DNA of 64,000 bases from Iphione sp. A-MEVVRFRX5 (taxonomy: Eukaryota), in NCBI GenBank assembly GCA_976226885.1, contig OZ320315.1, positions 56,544,001 through 56,608,000 of the forward strand, written 5' to 3'. The position numbers and the translations under genes are program-made. Shown piece after piece: positions 22,101 to 37,100 of this stretch. Positions within the stretch are counted from its first letter, which is position 1. Every line of letters begins with the position of its first letter. The notes below the pieces were generated by a model. That model made no database searches and was not told the DNA's origin. It saw only the letters and a list, made by a program, of their open reading frames with translations.

Positions 22101-25100
22101 CCCTAGAGTCATCCAGTTTGGGGAATAACCAGTCATGCGGTGTGGTGTAGACCTGTACACACCCATCAGGAAGCAGAGCTGTTCGCCACAGTTAGATTGA
22201 TCTTCTTTAACCACTTTAACTAGCATACCTGTCAATGTATGATTAAAGCGTTCCACCACCCCATCACTTTGGGGGTGGTATGGCATCCTCCAGGTCTTCT
22301 GTATCTGCAACAGTTGGAGGAGCTCCTGCATTTGGGCAGCATCAAAGTTTCTCCCCTCATCTGAATGCAGGACCCTTGGGGGGGCCAAACTGACATGATT
22401 TCTCTCAGCAAGTGGTGAGCAGTTGACACAGCATCTACATCAGCAGTAGGGATGGTCTCTGTCCACTTCAGGAAATGGTCCGCAACTATGATAATGTAGC
22501 CGTTACCCCTTGGCATGACTGGGAAGGGGCCGCAAACATCTACTGCTACTAACTCCCAGGGCCCGGGCCATTCTGAGCTGCATGGGGACTTGGTGCTTGC
22601 AAGCGGGGTCTGGACATCGCTGGCACTCCAGGCACCCTTGATTCCATTGGCACACATCTCTGCTAAGCCCAGGCCAGAAGTAACACATCCTAATGGCTCC
22701 CTCAGTCTTCTCTGGTCCTAGGTGTTTTGCAAGGGCCCCCCCATGGACCTCCTTCCACACCACATGGCATAGGTCCAAGGGGACATAAGCTTGTTGTCAC
22801 ACGCCTCTGTCCTCCATGCTTCAGCGCTTAAACAGCAGCTGACGAGAGATGCACAGGTGGGGTCACTCGTTCTTCAGACAACACGCCACATCACACGAGC
22901 CCTTTCTCTCCCCCCTCAAGCCACCGGTGCAGCTCTCAAACCAGTTCATGTCATTCTTGGGCTTGCAGCAATCCCCCCTCATCTGACCTTGCCTCGATCT
23001 GTAAAGCTGCCACCCTGCTATCAGGTGCCTCATCCTCCTCTTTGGGTTCCCTGCCACACTAGTGGCACTTAGTCCATGAAAGGCTATCCATGTTGCTGTG
23101 TTGTCGTCCCAGGCAGTGTAAGATCTCGATGTAACAGTAAATCTCTTTGAGCCAGCAAGCCAGCTGGCCCTCAGGCTCCTGGAACTGGCAGAGCCAGAGG
23201 AGGGAACTGTAGTCGGTTTGGATCACTAGCTTCTTCCCTTCCATGTATGTGCGGAACTTCCGAAGTCCAAAAACTACTGCTAGCAGTTCTTTTTGGGTCA
23301 CGCAGTAGTCCTTCTCTGCTCACATAAGGCTCTGACTTGCATAGGCCAGTGCCTGCTCTCTCTCTCCTTGCTCCTGGGAAAGTACCACTCCAATCCCGGT
23401 GGTTGACGCATCAGTGTCCATGGTCAACTGGTAGTCGGGCTGGGGATACGCCAGGATGGGGGATGACATCGGCCAGTTCTTCAACTCAACGAAGGCCCCC
23501 TGGCAGTTTTTGTCCCAACGGTACTCTTCACCCTTCTCCAGCAGGCGATGCAGGGGGCCCGTAGTAGGAACACAGTCCAATGAAGCTGTGCAGCTCAGTG
23601 ACACAGTGTGGGGTAGACCACTCCTGGATGACTCTCACTTTTTCCAGATCTGGCTTCACACCCTAGGCTGACACGTGGTGTCCAAGGTATGCCACCTCCC
23701 ACTGAAAGATCTGGCACTTCTGTGGCTTGATCTTGAGTCCTGCTTGCCGTAACCAGATGTTTTTTAAACTTTAGAAGTGTTTATTTCTGGAACAATACAC
23801 AACTTGGTACATTTCGTCCAGAGGTGATAATAATGAGATGATAGTAACCATTGTAGTCAACAACATGAAAGCCAACCATTATACAGCCTTAAGTCCTAGA
23901 TCAGTATACAATGTATTAATACGAGTTTCATTTTCACAAATTTTGTGAAATAGAAAACAACTTAATAACAAGGACAACTTCAGTGGGACAAATGCCCAAG
24001 TAAACAACTGCTTTCAGCAATTAACACATAATATCTAATATCATCGCTCCTAGTTTCTTATAAACATAGTAACCTATTCGAATGTTACTATTCTAATTCA
24101 CTGTCTTGTACCTCTGCCAATACTGTTGGTTTTAATTATGTCATTCTACATTCCATCAAATCACAGATATAATCCAGCTTTCCTTAAAAGAAAAAAATAG
24201 TCGGTCAGTCATAATCACTCATTTCTTGCAAACAGTCTCATCAATATGCGAGCCTTGCGCCTCCTTACTTTTAGATAGCCAATAAAGGCCTTCAAGTCTA
24301 ACTTGGTTACATATCTATCAAGGGACATCCACAGTTTGCATGAGCAGTAATAACTAGACTGTTTAAATTTTGAAAAGTAGGGTTTAGCTGGTATGATTCT
24401 AAACTTGTTTCTTATCCGCTGGACTTCCTTCCCACTATTTGTATACTTATCATCTAAGGGTTCATTATGTACCTTACAGTTTGCAAATAAGCGCAGCAGA
24501 GTTATATCTCGTAGTTCAAACAACTCCGTTTTGACTTCAGTACGGGGAGGAACTTCAGTACTACATAGTGTATACAGTCTTCTTCGTAGAGTTATATAAC
24601 GTTCGAAGTAATTTGGTCTAAATTTTGTTAATACGAAGATCCCATAATCGATTTCCGGGAAGGCCATGGTCGTTACCAACCGTTGTAGTGTTCTATTATC
24701 TATGTATGGCTTAATATGTGTTAACATTTTTAATTTGTAGTAACCCTTCTTCAGTAGATCAGTGAGGTGCAGGTGCCAGTCTAGATACTTGTCAATTTGG
24801 ATTCCTAAATATTTAAAGACCGTAACTTCACTTATCACAGCGTCCCCAACTGTTATTGGACCTAAGGGTTTTTCAGGGCGATATGTGGGGCACATATATT
24901 TTGTTTTGCTCATGTTTATTCTAATCTTATTTTCTAAAGACCATCGAATTACCTCCTCTATTCCTCGTTTTAAATTAGCCATACTCGTGGGTCGGTCAGG
25001 ACCTTCTGAGATTAGCACTACATCGTCGGCATACATCATGTAGTCTACGGAGTTAATTGAGAGCAACAGGTCATTTATAAATATAAGAAATAATGTGGGC

Positions 25101-28100
25101 CCCAGGATGGATCCCTGGGGGACACCAGTCTGCACTTGTTGGAAGCTAGAGTATACATTGTTTATTTTTACTCGTTGTCTACGATTTGACAGATACGCTC
25201 GCATCCACGGGACAATTTTCCTTAGGCCTATTCCCGACATTTTCTTTAGCAAAATATTGTGATTTACCGAATCAAAGGCCTTGCTAAAATCAATAAAGCA
25301 AAGGCCAACATGTCTGCAAGCATTCAAGAGCTTATGTACCTTTTCTAGTAAACAGTAGACTGCCATCTCAGTACCCCACTCTCGTCTAAAACCAAATTGG
25401 GCATGACTTAGTCTTTTATTTGATTCGAGATACCGAGTTATCCTATTATTTATTATTCATTCTACCACTTTAATCACCACCGTTAGAAGACTAATTGGAC
25501 GATAGTTTTTTATGTCAGACCTGTTTCCACCTTTGTAAATTGGAACAATAGTTGCGTCTTTCCACTGTTGGGGGAGCGAGGCTGTTGTTAAGCTCAGATT
25601 TGCTAGCTCGAGTAGTTCATCAGTTAAATCTAATAATATCTCTTTACAAATTTTCATTGGGATATCCAAAAAGTTTGAGGCCTTGTTTAAAGGTAAATTA
25701 GAGACAGCGGTTATCCATTCATCAATAGTAATTAGTGGTACTCCCATGTGCAAATAGGAAGGGACAGAATAAGAGATCACTTGAGTAACGTCCGGGAGGT
25801 CCGATATGCTCTCTTTTACTACATTGATGAAGTAGATGTTTAGCTTTTCTACAGACAGCGTCAGTAATTCTGGATTACCATGTTCATCTAAGAACTGCAG
25901 AATCAAGTTTTTCTCTTTTAAACCCAACTCAGATCTCAAGTGACTCCAGAAACGCTTTGGATTATTCTTATCTAAGTTAATTTTCTTTGTAATAAATTCC
26001 TTCCTGCTTTGTCTCAGTTCCCTATGGACTCTATATTTAGCTAGTTTATATATAAGATGGTCGTACAAGTCGCCCGTCCTGTGGTATTTCTTCAATGCTT
26101 TGTTCCTGTTCCTTATACAATCTCGAATATAACTAGTACACCATAGCGGGGAATTTGTCCTTTGTGCCCATTGCTTTACTGGTGCTAATGCATCAACTGT
26201 TTTCGCCAAGGCATGTTCAATGTAGTCCCAGTATTCCTGTGCTGTCTGAATATAAAATAGCCTATCCCAGTCATCAAATGTCATTTTCCTCCTAAAGTCT
26301 GTGATAGTCACCCCCTTCCAGATACGTCCAGTGATGTATTCTTTCGTAACTTTTTCAGTCATCCACTCTACACAAATTAAATTGTGGTCACTCAGTGTAT
26401 AATCCTCAACGTTGCATTTTAGCAAATTTCTAGGTAAATCAGTGATCAGAAGATCAATTATCGTACGCAATCTGGGGGTAACACGAGTGTATTTATCTAT
26501 TAACTGCGATAGTGAATTCTCATATATCAATTCAGTGAGCATATGCTTCGATGGGGATGGTTTAGCCCAGTCTACATTGAAATCCCCTACCATGAGTATC
26601 AAGTTCTTACTATTAAGTTCTTTTATTTTCGTCAACTGCCTGTTTAGATTTTCCAACGCCTCTCTCAAATTACCTGAAGGTGGACGATAAACACAGCATA
26701 TATAGATGCTTGGGGTAGTACAGTTTCTTACTCTAAGCCACAACAATTCTAGATCTGCAGTCAAACTAGGACCTATGTCAACTGGAGTTACTATGGTTGC
26801 CAGAGTATCCCTTACATATATTAAAAGCCCCCCCCCTTTCTTTGAGGTTCTATCCTGTCTATACATACAATAGCCCGGTTTCTCTAGCAGACCTGCCGGG
26901 TACGATTGCGTTAACCATGTCTCACCGATACAAAGACAATCAGGTGATTTCGTCTTTAACATAAACGATATCTCGTCTAGTTTCGAAACAATGGAGCGTA
27001 TATTTATATATATTATCTTAAACATAATCCTTCTGTGTTATAGCCCAGGCTGAAGATGTCATATAAAGTACTTTGGCAGCAAAAACATCTAGTGATCGGC
27101 ATAGAGCATAAACATAAGTAATGAGTATAGATGAAATTACACGCAGTGCAGTGGTAGCTCCACCACATGTACATAGCATGGTAGACAACCCTCCCCCCCA
27201 GTCCTGTCAGGCTATTAAGTGTAATACTCCTCAATCTTGTTATAAATTTTGCAACCTTATATAATAATTGGGGGCTTACTATCAAATCGTAATGGTGCCA
27301 ACAGCCCCGCGATCTGTAATTGTAAGCTCACAGTCTTATCATACCAAGTTATAACGGCAAACATCTTATAAGTATCTTAACCCCTTCCTGACCGAGTAAT
27401 TGGGGCGATGTCAGTATGGTAACTGAGGTGTACATATAAAATGCTCCATATCAATGGAACTAATTGACATAGAATAAAGTGTGAGACATCATTGAAAAGC
27501 TGAGAAAATGTACTTTTTAGATATGTCTTTGTTGTATATATTACTTTATATAGCTGGAAGGTGTCACGTGGTATGTCACGTGGTTTTATAATTTTTCCTT
27601 ATAAATAGAAGCCGTACTGCATAGAAAAGTGAGAAAAAGGGCAAGAAATATTTGTTTTAGACATAATATTGCATCGTACGAATTGTAGAGGAAGTCATAA
27701 GGATTAATTTGATATATTAAGCATGTTGTTATTATAAAAATTAAGAAAATTATCTATTACCAAAGTTGGCACCATGTGGCGCCCAAAATACCGCTTCATG
27801 CGGGAAACAGATGATGGCGCTGTTGTCGAGACGAATCGTCTAGGACGTAATGACTTAAATGTACATTAATGTTGATTGCACTGCTATTGCGGTATATTAA
27901 CATTAATATTGGTGTGAAAGAGTTACAGGGCATCATGATTTAGTAAATAAATGTGAAAAAAAACATTTAAAAATCTACGATGAACATGTAAATGATGACG
28001 TCATAGTAACTTGTGACGTTCTGATCAAAAAACACTCGACGAGTCTGTTGAACTAAAGCATTTATTCCAAAAGATCAGGAATGGATGAACTAAGGAATGC

Positions 28101-31100
28101 CTTTGCAATAAGAGGGTGAGTATCTCTAGAGTATTTCTACATAATTGCAACTAATATAAAGTGATTATTAATATTTAATCATCACATTCTGTATGAACAC
28201 GTCTACCACGTGTTGGTCGATCAGTAGTGACTGACAAGCGATCAGTATATGTGATACCTCTGGAGGGTTGTACCCATGTATGAGGAAGTACATCTGGAAC
28301 TTGTGTACATAATGAAGAGTAATGCTGTATTATTACAAATCATTAGATATATTGGAATTGCAGTTTGTTTTTTTTTCATCTAGGTTGCAGATGCCCCTTG
28401 CGTTGCAATATCTCATAGAAGATGGTCCCACCAAGAAAACAGTGTACAGGCGTTTATGGGTAGCTGTGAAGGTAAGGCCAATTGACTGGGAATAAACATG
28501 ATGGGAATTATTTTGAAAGATGACAATGCCTATAGTAAAATACCTACTTCTTATTTTTACAGTTCGGTGGTCAACTTGGTGGTGGGATGACCACTTTCAA
28601 TTTCCCACCTGAGCTACGTGCTGCCATCCGTGCTTGTTATGCTGATGGACAAGGAGGGGCATATGACCATCAGTACAATGGCAATCCACATGTATGCATT
28701 ATAACTGAGTCTCGAATGTCACAGTGGAATTTCATGATCATCTGAACAGTTCTGTTGTTGGAAATGTAGATGTTTGCCTGCATATCATAAAATGTGGTGC
28801 TGACTGTGTGCTTCCTTCCAGGTGTATCATGTGTCCTACACTGAGCTTGCCAACATACCCTACCCTCCTAGGAAGAAGACCAAGTGAGAACACAAGGCAA
28901 GTAACTCCTGCTCATTTATGGCGACAGCTTTCCAAGATCAGTTTCCTGTGGACATCAAAGGCTGCTGAGTGCCATAATTTGACACAATTTCTCTCTGAAT
29001 TCAAGCAAAGGTGCATGTTGCACTTCGGGTGAAGGCATGCCCAGTTGCCCTTGTACTGCTGGCCATGGACGATGTAGCACAATTTGCAATTCCGTCGAGC
29101 AGGGACATACTCTGGTGTGTCCGCAGTGATACTCAGCGTATTCATGTGTTCTTGAGGCAAGTGTGGAGCCACTGGCTGGCATGGGAACAGGTACTGGCTC
29201 ATCATCAGAAATTCCTGCAAGCTGTTTTGCCAGCTCAGCTCTGAACCACAGCTGTGAGTAATATGCTGGTCTTTGTAGAGCCGGATCATCAGGATGAAGT
29301 TTCCTCCATTTTGTGAATAGAATGAAGGCATTTACAATGGCTACATCAATCATATGGTAGAATAAGGTTTTCCACCAATGAACTGATTTGAGCAGCACAT
29401 TGTAAGGCTGGATCAGCTGATCTGATAGATCAACAGCCCCCATTTGCAGATTGTATTCAACGATGGCCGCAGGCTTCTTTACATACACAACACGGTTACG
29501 TCCAGCTGGGTCTTTCACATTCCTCTTTGCCATACTGAAGAGATGCCCTTGGTGAATGGTTGAGCATACGGTGACACTTCGTGAGTCCATCCATTGTTGG
29601 AATAGAATAGGACCATCCCTCAGATATCGCATGTCACCACGAGATGATTTTTTTGCCCAGGTCTTATCCTTCAGCACCTGTAGAAGAAGAAGTGTGGATG
29701 TACTTAGTAAATGCAGACAAGAATGAATGATATATTTCAGATAGCAATGACCAATATGTTTCTTGAGAGCAAATATCACTATGCATTGTGGTATCAGGTG
29801 AGGACTTTTCTCTAGGAAATTTTACCTGTGGCATTCCTTTCCTGTTTGTGATGACAGTCCCACAAGAAGTGATTCCATTAGAGAGCAGATGGGTCAGCAG
29901 AGCAATTGATGTGTAAAAGTTGTCGAACCACAGTTGGTAACCCTGATGCATAAATGATGGGATCAGATTCGCCACTACATCATATGCAAGACCATTGCTG
30001 CTGGGATTTTCTCTCTTGCCAGTGTAGACGCTGTGGTAAAAAACATAACTGATCTTAATTAGTAGTGCAGTAATGCATAGATTGGGTAGGGAGAGTACAA
30101 CGTATCACAATGCACTAGGGTTAATTGTCATTTTGTCACTGTATGTCACTGTTTTCTATAGGAACTTACTTGAATTGCAGAGTGTATCCAGTGAGGGATT
30201 CGCAAGCACACCACAATTTGAAACCAAACCGTACTGGTTTCTGTGGCATATACTGGCGAATCCCTGATCTGCCCTTGCTCTTCACCATTCGCTCATCCAT
30301 GGCAATATTCCTTCCAGGTTGATACACTTGAGGGCACACCTTGTTGAAGTGCTCCAGGAGAGGTCTAACCTTGCAGAGCTTATCATCATGATCTTCTTCA
30401 GTTGGATGGGATACGTGCATCATTGCAAGTATTGCCTTGAACCTACAAGAACAACCAAGGAGAAGCAAGGCATCACTCAGTATTCCTGTACCTTACATGA
30501 AATAAAATGAAACTGTTCCTGACATAAATCTCTTCATTCCTCTTACTGAATATACAGACATATACAGATGTACTGCTCTTACCTGTTCCTAGACATATAC
30601 CGCCTAGCCCATGATCCTGAGAAGGGCGGAATTGTACACCAGTACAACGCCATTTCTGGGAACCGATTCAAACCCATCAGGATGACCAGTCCCAAGAAGC
30701 AAGACATTTCTTGAAGTGTAATGTTTTCCCAGCTTCCATCAGAAAACTTGGCATAGCTCTGCTTATCGAGGATGTGTATCCATGCATATGTGTTGGAGTT
30801 GTCCACCAGCAACTGCATTGAAATAAAACAACAATTACACACATTTGCTACCAAAGGTCGCATACATACAAATATGATGTAGTCCAGTGGTCAGTGCACA
30901 TGGCTTTTGATGGCAGGACTTGGAGTCAAACAAAAAGACAAAAAACAAAAAGAATTATACATAAACACATATTATTTCATGATTTTATTACCTGCATGAC
31001 ATCCATGGTGAAAAAGAGCTTTAAAAAATCTATAGCTCTTGTAAATGCTCCAGCTTCAGATCTTGTACCACTGTCACAAATGTGCAAGCCTACTGGCCTT

Positions 31101-34100
31101 CTTGGCTTGAATGCTGGATTTGAGATCCTTGCATCCCTATCATCATAGGATTTCAGCCTGTCGTATTCAAAAAGATGTATTTATTATAAGTACCATTATT
31201 ACCTCGGATATATGATGTAAGTGATGTAGTCCAGTGGTCAGCGCACATGACTTTTGATGGAAGGACATGGGTTCGAATCCCTTGAGGGGTAAACTTTTTT
31301 TTTTCCATAATGTTCCATTTACAGGAGTACTTTACCAAATTAACACCAAAACATTATCCTTCCAAGCAATAGACACACTTATCACTAAATTTAGGTAATA
31401 CTTCACTCCCAATAATATTATTGATAATAAAGCATACGATACTTACGTCTTTGACGTTGTCTGCCTCCTTGGCTCTTCCACTGGAGGGAACACATCTGGA
31501 TCTTCTTCATCCTGTGCCTCATCTGGTCTCACCAATAGCTCATCCAGGAGGTCTTCTTCCTCAGGTGATAACCCTTCTTGGTTACACTCATCCACATATT
31601 GCACCCCAAACCCTCTGGCTATGAGGCCTTTTGCTTTTTCAGCTGCAGTTCGTTTAGGACGACTCATGGTTACCCACTCCAGTGTTTGAACACTGACTGG
31701 AGGTGTTACATCAGGTCACGTGACTATTTATTCATTAATGGAATCAATTAAAAATCACCAAAACACAAAAAAGGGTTAATGTATTTGTTTCCTTTTATTT
31801 CTGGCATTTCCAAGCAAATACAATGACGAATAATCATTATCCACTCATGTCAGGTGATCATCCTCCTCCAGTGCCTAAACTTGGTCTGCCCACTGATTCA
31901 GTGGTCACGTGACTCAGCTAATTTGCATAAAACTAAAAAAAAACAACAAAAAAGTGTTTCGGTATATGTTTACTATTATTCCTGAAAATTTGGTACAAAT
32001 CGGATAATTATTAATGGTAGAAATTAACCAAATCCTTATCATCCAGATCTGTACGATAAGCCTATGGTCGGTCAGGAAGGGGTTAAAGCCACTACCAAAT
32101 ACACTTTTAAGAGTATTGTAATCTCGATGTTGGGACTCTCCAACCTAATATGCTACAAATAACTAGATCACCGACATAAATGTGATAGTAACAGATCAAA
32201 CAATAACAAATCAAATCAAATCACCATGGTATTGTGCAGTAATGGTTTGTCCCGTACAACAGTTAGTGGTAATAGCATATCAGACATAATGAATCAAAAC
32301 AAATCACCATGGTATACCACTCTTAGATTAATTACTTGAGAGCAAACATTATACATTTTTACCCTCCCACAGCAGTTGATGCATAATACAACTGAGACAA
32401 TAATGAGTTCAATTATCAATAACGTTATCAAATAGTAAAACGCCATAGTGGTGCCAATCAGCCCCACTTGGTCTACCAGGTTACGTACCAATCGAGTATT
32501 TTCCTTTTAACTCAAATGTTTCTCAGTGAGATAGCGTCAAAAACCAAACTAGTCAGCTTACTGGAAACAACAATTAATTACCGAGTCCGCCAGTGTGGTG
32601 CCAACAGCCCCACCTGGTGTTGTCAAGTAAATTATATTCGTTGACCAGGCAAAATGGCAAATTAACTAGCTCCTTGTTTTCTGTAAGGTAAATTTAATAC
32701 AAATGACAATTGAATACTGAGTCCGCCAAGTAGTGCCAACAGCCCCACTTGGCTTCTTCAAGTAAGCTGAAATTATTTGTCAATCATAAAGGCAAAAATG
32801 ACCTCACCTTCTCTTTAGTAGGGAATCAAATCATACTTTTACCATAGGCCGTACAGTTGGCGATAAAGCCGTATCAATGCGTCTATCAGATACCTAACCA
32901 AATAGGGCTTCCAGCAGTCCTCCAAGTGGCATCCATCCCCAAGTCTCGACAGTCGGTTTCTCCAAACGCCCTCCTTCCTCGAATGTAGTACCATGTGACA
33001 CCATGGAGTCGGGACTCCGTGGGCCATGTTAATCGTTACGATTCGCTGGTTGACCATATGTGTGGCAGTATTTATAACTGACTGGACACGTTGACTGTCT
33101 CTGGAGGTAGCGTAGTATCCATTTAGGACATAATTCATTCGGCCGTAATCCCTCGAGAATATAGTTGCCAGCATGATAGTACTCGACGGGTAACGGCGCT
33201 GTATCCTAAATCAAGCGTACCGGTACATCACTTCCAGTTCATTTGCAGCTTCGATTGGTGAGAAGTATCTTGGCATGACATACCGTATAGATACTCCATC
33301 GTCCCTGGTCATACGCCGACGGACTGTTAGGTTGTTCGTCCCCACGAGGATTATTATGACCGAAGGTATTGGCGTCAGGTCTTCCGACAGAGCACTGTCA
33401 ACCAAACTGTTTATTGTGGCGCCTGGATATACACGCATGTTTACATGCCAGCTGGTCCTATCAAATATTTCTTGCAGACCCCTACCGTGACTCGAAGTGA
33501 GGATATAGATAGACGCCATTTCGCCGGTCTTTTACTTTAGTCGAGTTTTGTTTGCAAAGAGTTATTGCTTTTCCGCCACTGTTTTCGTAAACGGGCTTCC
33601 GACCATGCAGTCACTCGTGGTTGTTTTCGGGCTCGGCACTTCCGGCGTGTCCGTGGTGCGGGTGCATTCGGAAACAGTGGCAGATTCTGCCGAGTTATCC
33701 GGTTGCAACATCGGTGGAGACAAAGCAGCTAGTTCGTTCCTGATCTGTTCTAGCATCTTACCAAGATGGTTCTTCCCAGTGAATGATCCTTCCAGTAGCT
33801 CTTTTGAACCTAGGTTTTGTCCAGCACCCCAGAATGTAGAGCGGCTTGCTTCAATCAATATGTCATTTCCAGTTGATTGCAGATATATAGCAAGCCAACT
33901 TCCCGGGGCAAATTTGCAGCGAAGGGTTGTCAGCATAGCTTCTGTCTTGCCCGTTTCCCATGCTGCCGACGGGGGGATTCTGGCTTTCAGTGATAACAGA
34001 TCATCAATATTCTTTACCTTTAGGATTTCTTCTGCAAGCTTTGGGTTGTTTGCCGCTTTTGCCTTGAGCCATTGGTATCTCTGTTCCGAAGAATCAAAGG

Positions 34101-37100
34101 TATGACCGTCTGTTTCCATCTTCACTGGATACAAATTTGACAGTGGTGACACTGAGAACGCAAAGAACAACCTTCCAGCATCTCTGATATGAGATGATTC
34201 GTAGAGTTTCAATGATGGCGGGGCAGTGGATATTGTGTCAGTGGTGTATGCCTTTCCATCAATCACTATTGATTCTCCACTTAATTTAATAGAGGTTGTC
34301 GGTGAGTGTCTTTTCACATATCGCTTTACCCACCCTAATTCAGATTTTTTACGGCGAGTACTTGGGGCTTCATCCTGGTTGATCCAGATATTGGACCCTT
34401 TTAGAAGCCGTCTGTTTCTCAACAATGCTTCTACTGTGCTCTGCCGAACAAATTTGATTAAGATAGGTCCCAGAGGCATCGGCCCAGCTCTTTTTATCCT
34501 AAAGGCAGTATCAATGTCGTCTTCCTTTATCGTTACACCAATCTTCGAAGCAATTTCAATCACCTGCTGTGATATATCTGTTCTGGCTTGTAGTCCTGAG
34601 CCATCTATTAGCAATGTTTTCCGTCGATTCCATTTATCCATATCCGCTCGCAGATTAGCCACACAACTGGAGCCCGATATGTCATTCAAACGTTTCATCT
34701 CCGCCCGCAAGCTATTATTTTCATTGGTTAACCTTGCAATATCAGATTTCAGAGCATTGATCTCTTTCTTCTTACCCTCCACCTTGGTGTTGATATCTTT
34801 CACCTTGTTCAGTGAGGAGTCCATTTTAGATTCAAATACATCTAGCCTAGCATTCAATGATGATTTTATCCCCCGCACCTCCTTCAGTAGTAGTTGAAAA
34901 TTTTCCGGCCCAATCTCTCCAGTGAGGATCATCTCTTCCTCAGTTGTCGAACTATTTGCCTTTTTACGTATAGAATCCCTTTTCGCCGATTGGCCCGGCA
35001 CCTCAGTGTTATTCAAATATTCTAGGATGCTTGATTGATTCAACTTGGGAGGGATTCCCTCAGACCGATCCATGTTTGGACTTACAGGTGGGTTTACTAA
35101 TGCACCTGCCATAGCAGCCGTCAGAATCGTGTGCCCACCTCAATATCGCTCACAAGCAGATTAAAAAAAACAAATATATCGGCGTTCTTCACAACAGATA
35201 AGTTCAAGAACGATATCAAAATGTTCTTATTATACTGACTTTAGTGAAGGCCTTGTCTTTCGTGTCCAGTTCACATGGGTAATATCCTAGCCTGACATTC
35301 TCAGGGGAGCCGGGTTCGCGGTACCTCTCTCTACCGCACCATGCTTGTTTATGATGTTCTTCCATCCTCTTCATCCTCTGACTTCTCATCCCCACTCTCA
35401 CTGGGCTTGTGGTTATTCACCTCCTCCTTAATCTCTGAGGGAGTTGGGGCCTCATCCAGAATGTGTGGCTGATGTTCTTCTCCGGCCCCACTGAGCCATG
35501 GGGGATCCCCATCAACCATCCCTAACTTGACTGGTGTCATTAGGTCCACTTCCTGAAGCTCACCTGCCTTGTCACCTGGCAGCTCCACCCAGAGCTTGCC
35601 GAGCTCTGCCCACTTGGCAGGCTCACCATGCTCCACTGCATGTTCTGCCGGATGCTCCACTGAGTCAAACTCCACTGATGCTCCGGTGGTGGAGATCCCA
35701 CTGCTGCCACCAATTGTACACCCCGAACGAAGTGACATACTAGGAGGTAATGTTTCCTGAAGTTCATTGCTTGAATGCAAGAAGGTGAATGATGATGAAG
35801 CTCTGCAAGGCTGCTTTTTATACATAAATGTGAATCCGCCCAGAGCCCCAAACATTACATTAAACTCCGCCTGAAGGCTCTGCCCAGAATACGGCCCAAC
35901 TTACTCTACTTACACTATATTTTATCATTATCACTTAAATACATTCTTTTCTCTCCTGTGTTTTTCCTCCTTGCTAATATTGTATATTCTCTGCCTTCCC
36001 AAAATCTCATAGGTGCTCTTCCATTGTTTTTAGAGTTCCTACATGTGTTCCTTCTTTTGGGTCACAGCTATCGAAACTTAAGCTCAGCCAATTTGTATAC
36101 CAGACAGTCCTTAGGGCTCTGAGAGTATTTCATTCTTCGATATGCCTCACTTTTTATGGTGATAGCATGTCTTAACCTTTTGTGTGCTTTTAAAGGGCAT
36201 TGCATAGGTTATACCTGTACTTTGACCATTGGGACATATTCTATCTGCAATGCATTGTCTCACTTTTAAGAGGAATTCTGTGATGTAATTACAACTATTA
36301 GACTAATAGCTACCTGTCAAATTGGTTTCACCTGCTCAACACTTAATAATTTTACATTAGGACGTTTACCACATCTTGTAACATTAAGCTCATCATATCG
36401 AGATTAAATGATTAGCTTTAACTTTCCCATGGATTAGATTACGATCACTAAGTTTTATTTCTATACTAGCCGCTTTGTACATACGGACATCTGAAAAAGT
36501 CAAGTCAATTGTGGATGCACCATTTTTACGCTTTCGTGTCGGTTCCTGCACTTGTTGACGTGGCCCAAACATTAATTTAGTTTCTTCTAAGTTGTAACAA
36601 CTCTTTGACACGACATTACGGTATCATTCGCTACTCATATTGTTGCCAATTAAATCACATGCTTGCTTCACGTTCCCATTTACGAACCTTTTACCTAATG
36701 AATTCTAAATGAATCGAATATTCTGTGAACAAACCATACTTTACGGCTAAGTTTCCATGTACACCCTATCCAAGTAAGGTATGTAAGTGTACTGTAAATG
36801 TGCTTTTTTTTGGAATACATGTATATACACAAATGTTTCCATATCAGCATGGGGCATGCAATGTGCAGTATGTCCGCATGTAGCATGTTTAAAAAATGGT
36901 ACATGTCCCATTCTGCCATGAAAGTTAGGTATGTTGGAACATGTTTTTTGGAAAGAATTGTTGTTGTAAAATGAGAACATGGCGAATACATGCTTCACGG
37001 TGTGTACACAGTCATTATCAGATTAAGAAAGGATTAGCAGAAATGCCCAAACCAATATGGCTACATGGAGATATGAGCACATGGATACCCAGCCTAACCT

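What the first reader, a model, noticed from the sequence alone, without database searches (positions are those of the whole stretch)
27774..28887. piggyBac carries a second, convergent, multi-exon gene resembling the P2X7 'ballast' family
Seen: phase-consistent GT-AG exons within the TIRs encode about 130 aa ending in PPRKKTK (NLS-like). The stop lies 24 nt from the transposase stop, tail-to-tail. The core KTVYRRLW..KFGGQLGGG...FPPELRAAIRACYADGQGGAY follows the YR..W..G.LG.G....P......IR..(F/Y)...G.Y pattern of the P2X7 C-terminal domain and its free-standing invertebrate homologues. I recall a link of that family to the accessory gene of Kolobok transposons, but this needs checking. Known: classical piggyBacs encode only a transposase. 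Inference: a two-component piggyBac with a nuclear accessory or regulatory protein.
Basis: partly seen in the sequence, partly recalled or inferred. Interest (0 to 1): 0.75.

Follow-up and report, generated by a model that had tools for sequence, protein, structure and literature searches.

The report
piggyBac copy with small second gene
A young piggyBac jumping gene here very probably carries, facing its transposase, a small spliced second gene, but its claimed kinship with the P2X7 'ballast'/KolX family failed every test that could be run, and such second genes in piggyBacs were briefly reported in 2022.

Summary
A 4.7-kb piggyBac (TTAA duplications, perfect 19-nt ends including TTAA, 27377-32086) has a six-exon transposase on the minus strand. 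A GT-AG, phase-consistent reading frame lies on the plus strand, and its stop (28887) is 24 nt from the transposase stop (28912). The solid core is four exons, 105 aa, from ATG 28081. Its three introns have splice sites as good as or better than the transposase's own. Exons are GC-richer than introns (0.48 against 0.35), the frame has the best codon score of six, and no other of 168 tiles in the window gives such a chain. The upstream exon (27774-27846) is doubtful: weak splice sites and a CpG cluster. Kinship with P2X7 ballast/KolX is not shown. Exon pieces gave no Pfam or PDB match, the exhaustive search gave only spurious repeat proteins, and local Smith-Waterman, HMM and hhalign tests against KolX tails were at chance. 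The protein has one cysteine, not the seven zinc-binding ones. The Kolobok recollection is correct, and Kojima and Bao (2022) already noted KolX-tail-like proteins in a few piggyBacs. This scan flagged the same kind of gene at six other places in this genome. No RNA runs or related copies could be fetched. The transposase here has one frameshift.

The parts
27377..27395 (+). TTAA target duplication (27377-27380) plus terminal inverted repeat at the element's 3' end relative to the transposase
   Evidence: 19-nt perfect inverted match with 32068-32086. There are only 2 matches in the window and 0 expected by chance.
27774..27846 (+). It may instead be a CpG-rich promoter or 5' leader segment.
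   Evidence: It joins in phase to 28079. However, the donor scores -2.3 and the acceptor -3.8 bits, the codon score is neutral, and CpG o/e is 1.37 against 0.27 in the other exons.
27996..28003 (.). CRE-like palindrome TGACGTCA, 78 nt upstream of ATG 28081. It is a possible promoter element of the accessory gene (inference).
   Evidence: Pattern search. There is no ATG between about 27995 and 28081, and an in-frame stop lies at 28054-28056.
28081..28115 (+). Accessory gene exon 1 (ATG with G at -3 and G at +4)
   Evidence: donor AGG|GTGAGT scores 6.8 bits.
28384..28471 (+). Accessory gene exon 2 (holds the ...KKTVYRRLW... stretch)
   Evidence: Acceptor 7.6 bits, donor AAG|GTAAGG 7.3 bits; GC 0.477 against 0.32-0.34 in the flanking introns.
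28563..28691 (+). Accessory gene exon 3 (Gly-rich loop, FPPELRAAIR..Y..GGAY motif)
   Evidence: Acceptor 7.0 bits, donor 0.9 bits; GC 0.504. It is the only match in the window's six frames to a KolX-like composite pattern that was written after seeing this sequence.
28822..28887 (+). Accessory gene exon 4, ending in PPRKKTK and then stop TGA at 28885-28887
   Evidence: Acceptor 4.8 bits; translation.
28912..29677 (-). Transposase exon 6, with stop at 28914-28912. It holds the end of the DDE domain and the Cys-rich C-terminal domain, which a single frameshift (roughly 29120-29180) puts out of frame.
   Evidence: PF13843 match E 5.6e-17. The spliced CDS is 1861 nt = 3n+1, and the Cys-rich part reads in frame +1.
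29826..31667 (-). Transposase exons 5 to 1 (30030-29826, 30442-30170, 30812-30583, 31157-30992, 31667-31447), separated by GT-AG introns
   Evidence: Open spliced frame with no stops; PF13843 matches on the exon ORFs; splice scores.
32068..32086 (-). Terminal inverted repeat at the transposase 5' end plus TTAA duplication (32083-32086)

Best explanation
This is a young, almost intact copy of an intron-bearing piggyBac transposon. The 1.5 kb between the transposase stop and the far terminal repeat carries a real second gene: a small spliced gene of four exons (105 aa; possibly five exons and 130 aa) transcribed towards the transposase. On present evidence the protein is an orphan. It has a glycine-rich loop, an Arg/Tyr motif that recalls the cysteine-free tail of KolX/P2X7 ballast only at motif level, and a basic KKTK-type tail.

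The most likely mode of action is inferred, not shown. The protein would be made from its own promoter near the 3' end of the element, enter the nucleus, and act as a cofactor or regulator of transposition of its own family. The stops are only 24 nt apart, and no canonical poly(A) signal follows the accessory stop on the plus strand for about 800 nt. The two transcripts must therefore overlap antisense at their 3' ends, which could couple or damp their expression. This copy cannot make a full transposase, because one frameshift lies before the Cys-rich domain.
For: - piggyBac identity: TTAA plus perfect inverted ends and PF13843 matches on three exon ORFs.
- Gene model: an open four-exon frame with consensus GT-AG sites. 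Splice scores are donors 6.8/7.3/0.9 and acceptors 7.6/7.0/4.8 bits, against 2.2-6.9 and 0.8-9.9 for the transposase's own introns.
- All three acceptors that pass the threshold in the 1.5-kb region are the ones the model uses. Only 1 of 168 window tiles yields such a chain.
- Composition: exon GC 0.41-0.53 against intron GC 0.31-0.40, the same contrast as in the transposase gene, Fisher p = 2e-4.
- Codon usage: the proposed frame scores best of six with a model trained on the transposase (8.6 against -5.8 or less). It beats 19926 of 20000 stop-free random frames.
- Precedent: a few piggyBac families encode a second protein (PMC9587614).
- 3' ends: no AATAAA or ATTAAA on the plus strand within 800 nt of the stop; the first canonical signals for the transposase strand are at 28179 and 28066.
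Against: - No expression evidence: no RNA run was listed for this stretch.
- No other copy or relative could be fetched, so frame conservation and purifying selection are untested.
- No protein in 1.84 billion representatives resembles exon 3.
- The splice thresholds and the motif were chosen after seeing the sequence.
- The lack of a nearby poly(A) signal on the plus strand is odd for a gene.
- The 5' end is unresolved.
- The mechanism (nuclear cofactor, antisense coupling) is inference from a 4-residue basic patch and from geometry.
Confidence: 0.55

Rival explanations
1. The gene is real and its protein is a true, very remote, cysteine-less relative of the C-terminal (guanine-nucleotide-binding) end of the KolX / P2X7 ballast domain. 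It would be of the same kind as the second proteins of piggyBac-2_GrCh and piggyBac-14_PI, and would work as a nucleotide-binding cofactor shared by the two TTAA-targeting superfamilies.
For:
- In that register, residues equivalent to human Y550, P570, R574, I577, R578, F/Y581, G586 and Y588 are kept, with K for R546. The numbering comes from my own count on Fig. S6. The important positions are as listed by Rump et al. 2020 (PMC7016195).
- The spacing differences from the family (+2, +1, +1) each occur in at least one KolX row of Fig. S6.
- Several other notes of this scan report the same motif in other piggyBacs of this genome. These notes are unverified.
Against: - Every statistical test was at chance. 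Smith-Waterman p ranged from 0.05 to 0.8. The HMM gave 0.6 bits, below 316 shuffles and random ORFs. hhalign gave P = 0.44.
- No Pfam or PDB match for the exon pieces.
- C572, P582, the W of the WRF motif and the G-F after Y588 are not kept.
- The seven zinc-binding cysteines that define the domain are absent.
- The local profile had only 4 sequences, and the full spliced protein could not be sent to Pfam or a structure predictor, so this is untested rather than excluded.
Confidence: 0.25
2. There is no second gene. The frame is a chance path through GT and AG dinucleotides in the long 3' untranslated or sub-terminal region of the transposon, and the GC-rich islands are transposase-binding or regulatory DNA.
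For: - No RNA evidence and no relatives.
- No canonical poly(A) signal downstream on the plus strand.
- The exons are short (35-129 nt).
- CACGTG and CRE motifs in the same region show that it holds regulatory-looking DNA.
- The thresholds in the tile test were set post hoc.
Against: - Three near-consensus introns lie in compatible phases, and every strong acceptor in the region is used.
- The exon/intron GC steps fall at the predicted borders.
- The codon score is best in the proposed frame, with p about 0.004 against stop-free random frames.
- A 1.5-kb non-coding tail would itself be unusual for a piggyBac (own knowledge).
Confidence: 0.2
3. The exons are a piece of a host gene picked up by the transposon (transduplication), carried along with its introns and without a role in transposition.
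For: The exons sit in genuine-looking introns with strong sites. The 5' end is ill-defined, as expected of a fragment.
Against: - A conserved host parent gene should have shown up in the exhaustive protein search with exon 3, and none did.
- The frame has its own ATG in good context and a stop placed 24 nt from the transposase stop.
- CpG depletion and composition match the transposase exons.
- Earlier scan notes describe the same arrangement in other piggyBac families of this genome (unverified).
Confidence: 0.07

Closest known systems
KolX-tail-like second proteins of piggyBac-2_GrCh (red alga) and piggyBac-14_PI (Phytophthora), Kojima and Bao 2022, Mob DNA 13:24 (PMC9587614)
   Same: Both are piggyBac elements that encode a second, small protein besides the transposase. 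[quoted passage not shown]
   Different: - The published proteins keep a plain LGKGKR..IP.C....IR..WP...GAY.GF tail. Here only a gapped subset of those positions is kept, and similarity to piggyBac-2_GrCh_2p is at chance (Smith-Waterman score 25 against a shuffle mean of 23.6).
- This element is in an animal genome.
- The gene has three or four introns and faces the transposase tail to tail.
- The orientation and splicing of the published cases were not checked.
KolX of Kol0-lineage Kolobok transposons / P2X7 cytoplasmic ballast (zinc-coordinating cysteine domain, ZCD)
   Same: An accessory protein carried by a TTAA-targeting DNA transposon. There is a motif-level likeness to the last 45 or so residues, which hold the R546, Y550 and R578 positions of the GDP site.
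   Different: The protein has no zinc-binding cysteine motif and only one Cys. No significant sequence or profile similarity was found. It is half the size of the domain, and it sits in a different transposon superfamily.
Two-gene DNA transposons in general (e.g. PIF/Harbinger with its Myb-like partner protein)
   Same: A cut-and-paste element carries a second gene that may serve nuclear import or DNA binding of the transposase. This comparison rests on own knowledge, by analogy only.
   Different: There is no sequence relation, and the function here is untested.

Membership tests
piggyBac superfamily transposon | TTAA target-site duplication and inverted ends starting CCC | tested here: met
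   TTAACCCCTTCCTGACCGA at 27377-27395 and its exact reverse complement at 32068-32086.
piggyBac superfamily transposon | DDE_Tnp_1_7 (PF13843) transposase | tested here: met
   Three exon ORFs match PF13843 with E 4e-25, 6e-17 and 2e-10, covering profile positions 16-349. The spliced frame is open through exon 6.
piggyBac superfamily transposon | Intact C-terminal Cys-rich domain in frame (autonomous copy) | tested here: not met
   The Cys-rich part (RRNCKLC...CNMHLC...) reads in frame +1 of exon 6, and the CDS is 3n+1 nt. This means one frameshift or an assembly indel.
P2X7 ballast / ZCD / KolX (Pfam P2RX7_C) | Zinc-coordinating motif of seven conserved cysteines | tested here: not met
   The 105/130-aa product has a single Cys. 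The family's motif is described in PMC9587614 and PMC7016195.
P2X7 ballast / ZCD / KolX (Pfam P2RX7_C) | Significant sequence or profile similarity to family members | tested here: not met
   - Pfam on the exon pieces: none up to E 10.
- PDB with exon 3: no P2X7 chain.
- Smith-Waterman against shuffles: not significant.
- Four-sequence HMM: 0.6 bits.
- hhalign: P = 0.44.
- Caveat: the spliced protein has no reference, so it was not sent to Pfam itself.
P2X7 ballast / ZCD / KolX (Pfam P2RX7_C) | Conserved tail positions (R546, A549, Y550, Y/F553, I/V568, P570, C572, R578, F/Y581-P582) | tested here: inconclusive
   In the best register, Y550, P570, R578 and Y581 are kept and K stands for R546. 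A549, Y/F553, I/V568, C572 and P582 are not kept. Three small gaps are needed (for the family rows).
P2X7 ballast / ZCD / KolX (Pfam P2RX7_C) | Ballast fold and guanine-nucleotide binding | not testable with these tools
Two-gene piggyBac (Kojima and Bao 2022) | A second protein-coding gene inside the terminal repeats | tested here: met
   Met on intrinsic evidence only: splice sites, phase, GC contrast, codon usage and uniqueness among the window's tiles. There are no RNA or conservation data.

The most novel reading that the evidence does not exclude
Intron-bearing piggyBacs of this animal lineage are true two-component transposons. A small nuclear protein keeps only the nucleotide-binding end of the KolX/ballast fold and is needed for, or tunes, transposition. 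The same cofactor module would then serve both TTAA-targeting superfamilies (Kolobok and piggyBac). The module that vertebrates fused to P2X7 would have a testable original job in transposition.
Probability: 0.12. Interest if true: 0.7.

Novelty: new member of a known kind. Interest (0 to 1): 0.35.

Why it matters
piggyBac is a workhorse of genome engineering and is normally treated as a one-protein system. A natural family that carries and keeps a second gene would point to an unknown cofactor or self-regulator of transposition. If the faint likeness to KolX were real, it would link the unexplained P2X7 'ballast' module to a function in TTAA-specific transposons. As it stands, this copy adds one more animal example to a class noted in one sentence of a 2022 paper and flagged several times elsewhere in this genome by this scan. 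It gives no new evidence on function.

Tried and rejected
- Pfam on the four exon pieces: nothing.
- PDB sequence search with exon 3: one chance hit to a phage hydrolase, E 5.
- Word search with exon 3 in a 69-aa open stretch: no candidates.
- Exhaustive HMMER with exon 3: two hits, both artefacts of repeats, a cadherin-like giant and a tandem-repeat ORF.
- Word search with transposase exon 6: 198 candidates, none significant. The length filter excludes full-length transposases.
- Word search with a 51-aa KolX tail taken from Fig. S6, meant to collect family members for a local profile: no candidates.
- Exact look-up of seven window ORFs: none in the collection.
- The search for related loci with the accessory piece and with transposase exon 6 in metagenome, genome and viral contigs: nothing.
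- The look-up of sequencing runs (rna): none was listed, so read laying could not be used.
- Rfam and ARAGORN on the element: nothing.
- A sixth intron as an explanation of the transposase frame change: rejected. No GT..AG pair of workable length, phase and composition exists around 29100-29180 (by inspection).
- An ORF running across the empty site, to show insertion into a coding part of the LINE: none.
- Left out because it has no reference: the spliced 105/130-aa protein was not sent to Pfam, PDB, the protein databases or the structure predictor. It was used only inside scripts.
Full report
**The element.** Window 27377-32086 is a piggyBac.
- TTAA plus a 15-nt terminal repeat starting CCC is present at 27377-27395, with its exact reverse complement at 32068-32086. 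These are the only two matches in the window, with none expected by chance.
- The transposase lies on the minus strand in six exons: 31667-31447, 31157-30992, 30812-30583, 30442-30170, 30030-29826 and 29677-28912. All introns are GT-AG.
- Three exon ORFs match Pfam PF13843 (DDE_Tnp_1_7) with E-values from 2e-10 to 4e-25.
- The spliced CDS is 1861 nt, that is 3n+1. The frame is open up to about 29170, but the C-terminal Cys-rich domain reads in the +1 frame. This copy therefore has one frameshift, or the assembly has one indel. No workable sixth intron explains it.
- The ends are identical and the element holds no N. It sits between the EN/RT ORFs and the NADAR/esterase ORFs of a LINE, so it is a young nested insertion.

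**The observation.** On the plus strand, exons 28081-28115, 28384-28471, 28563-28691 and 28822-28887 join in phase into a 105-aa product that ends in PPRKKTK.
- The stop at 28885-28887 lies 24 nt from the transposase stop at 28914-28912, tail to tail.

**Is it more than chance?** I scored splice sites with a generic metazoan matrix whose frequencies came from my own knowledge.
- The three core introns score 6.8/7.3/0.9 bits at donors and 7.6/7.0/4.8 bits at acceptors. That is as good as or better than the transposase's own five introns, which score 2.2-6.9 and 0.8-9.9.
- In the 1.5-kb region only three acceptors reach 4.7 bits, and the model uses all three.
- A dynamic-programming search for ATG-to-stop spliced frames at these thresholds found a chain of 3 or more introns and at least 318 nt in only one of 168 tiles of the window, both strands: this locus. 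The thresholds were set from the observed sites, so the test is post hoc.
- Exons have GC 0.41-0.53 and introns 0.31-0.40. This is the same contrast as in the transposase gene; for the core, 0.481 against 0.350, p = 2e-4.
- A codon model trained on the transposase scores the proposed frame best of six, at 8.6 bits against -5.8 or less.
- The core frame beats all but 74 of 20000 stop-free random frames of the same composition.
- I take the four-exon gene as probable.
- The upstream exon is doubtful. Its donor scores -2.3 and its acceptor -3.8 bits, and its codon score is neutral. It is also a CpG cluster, with o/e 1.37 against 0.27-0.34 everywhere else in the element.
- ATG 28081 has G at -3 and +4. 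An in-frame stop lies 27 nt upstream, no ATG lies in the 85 nt before it, and a TGACGTCA palindrome sits 78 nt upstream.

**What could not be tested.**
- No RNA run was listed for this stretch, so there are no junction reads.
- No other copy or relative could be fetched. The word searches, the exact look-ups, the scans of metagenome, genome and viral contigs and the scan's own sequence index were all blank.

**The family claim.** Kojima and Bao (Mob DNA 2022, PMC9587614) show that KolX of Kol0 Kolobok elements is the P2X7 ballast domain. [quoted passage not shown] A two-gene piggyBac of this sort is therefore not new in kind.

For this protein, however, the kinship is not demonstrable.
- The exon pieces hit no Pfam family up to E 10.
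- Exon 3 hit no P2X7 chain in the PDB.
- Exon 3 searched against 1.84 billion representatives gave only a cadherin-repeat protein and a tandem-repeat ORF. Both scores were summed over repeats.
- Locally, I compared the spliced protein with short KolX tails from the paper's Fig. S6 and Data S6. Smith-Waterman scores were 21-31 against shuffle means of 23-24; the best case had 95 of 2000 shuffles as good, and piggyBac-2_GrCh_2p had 677 of 2000.
- A four-sequence HMM gave 0.6 bits, rank 317 of 3262 among shuffles and window ORFs.
- hhalign gave probability 0.13% and P = 0.44.
In it Y550, P570, R574, I577, R578, F/Y581, G586 and Y588 (human numbering, my count on Fig. S6) are kept, with K for R546. 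C572, P582, the Trp and the final G-F are not kept, and three gaps are needed.
- The protein has one cysteine, so the zinc-binding motif that defines the domain (Rump et al. 2020, PMC7016195) is absent.
- Verdict on the family claim: a motif-level likeness that may be remote homology to the cysteine-free tail, but it failed every test that could be run.
- The decisive tests could not be run. They are Pfam/HHpred and a fold of the full spliced protein, ideally with relatives.

**How it probably works (inference).**
- The small protein would be made from a promoter in the 3' part of the element. Its KKTK-type tail fits a simple nuclear import signal (own knowledge).
- It would act on its own family's transposition, as a cofactor or a brake.
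- The stops are 24 nt apart. The plus strand has no AATAAA or ATTAAA for 800 nt, and the minus strand has its first ones at 28179 and 28066. Each transcript must therefore run into the other gene, giving antisense overlap.
- None of this is shown.

**Relation to earlier notes of this scan.** Six notes on other DNA of this genome describe the same kind of gene in other piggyBacs, with follow-ups ranging from 'remote relative' to 'failed most tests'. They gave me the word KolX, which led to the 2022 paper; I then read the paper myself. They are unverified and I do not count them as support. The scan has thus found this before on other DNA.

**Score.** This is a probable real gene and a new animal member of a briefly published class. 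Its homology is unproven and its function unknown. Interest is 0.35.

Noticed in passing
window 31220-31304 (+), and 30880-30930 (+): Inside transposase intron 1, and antisense to it, lies a tRNA-like Pol III-type unit: box A TAGTCCAGTGG at 31227, box B GGTTCGAATCC at 31270, and a T10 run at 31295-31304. A second copy without a good T-loop lies in intron 2. ARAGORN and Rfam call neither. This matches scan note s1-317828, which is about another piece of this genome.
   Followed up: partly
window 27774-27846: A 73-nt CpG cluster with CpG o/e 1.37, against 0.27-0.34 in the rest of the element.
   Followed up: partly
window 27565, 27577, 28207, 31717, 31906; 27996-28003: CACGTG boxes lie near both ends of the element, within GTCACGTG repeats, and one more lies in accessory intron 1. 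A TGACGTCA palindrome lies upstream of the accessory ATG. These may be transposase-binding or promoter sites.
   Followed up: no
window 28663-28684 and 29045-29066: A 22-nt inverted match (19/22) links accessory exon 3 (YDHQYNGN) and the transposase Cys-rich region (HGQQYKGN), in the same reading frame on the two coding strands. Two of 30 shuffles give as much, so it is probably chance.
   Followed up: partly
window about 29120-29180 (-): One frameshift puts the transposase Cys-rich domain out of frame in an otherwise open six-exon gene. It could be a real mutation or an assembly indel.
   Followed up: partly
window 24215-27025 (-) and 32839-35112: The piggyBac sits inside a LINE. EN and RT ORFs lie on one side (PF14529, PF03372, PF00078), and on the other side lie a 516-aa ORF with a NADAR domain (PF08719) and the esterase stretch of scan note s1-349367. 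No ORF crosses the empty site.
   Followed up: partly
window tiles starting 20251, 35251, 51751 (+): The spliced-ORF scan also found two-intron frames of 642, 375 and 309 nt with strong splice sites. They may be host or transposon exons.
   Followed up: no
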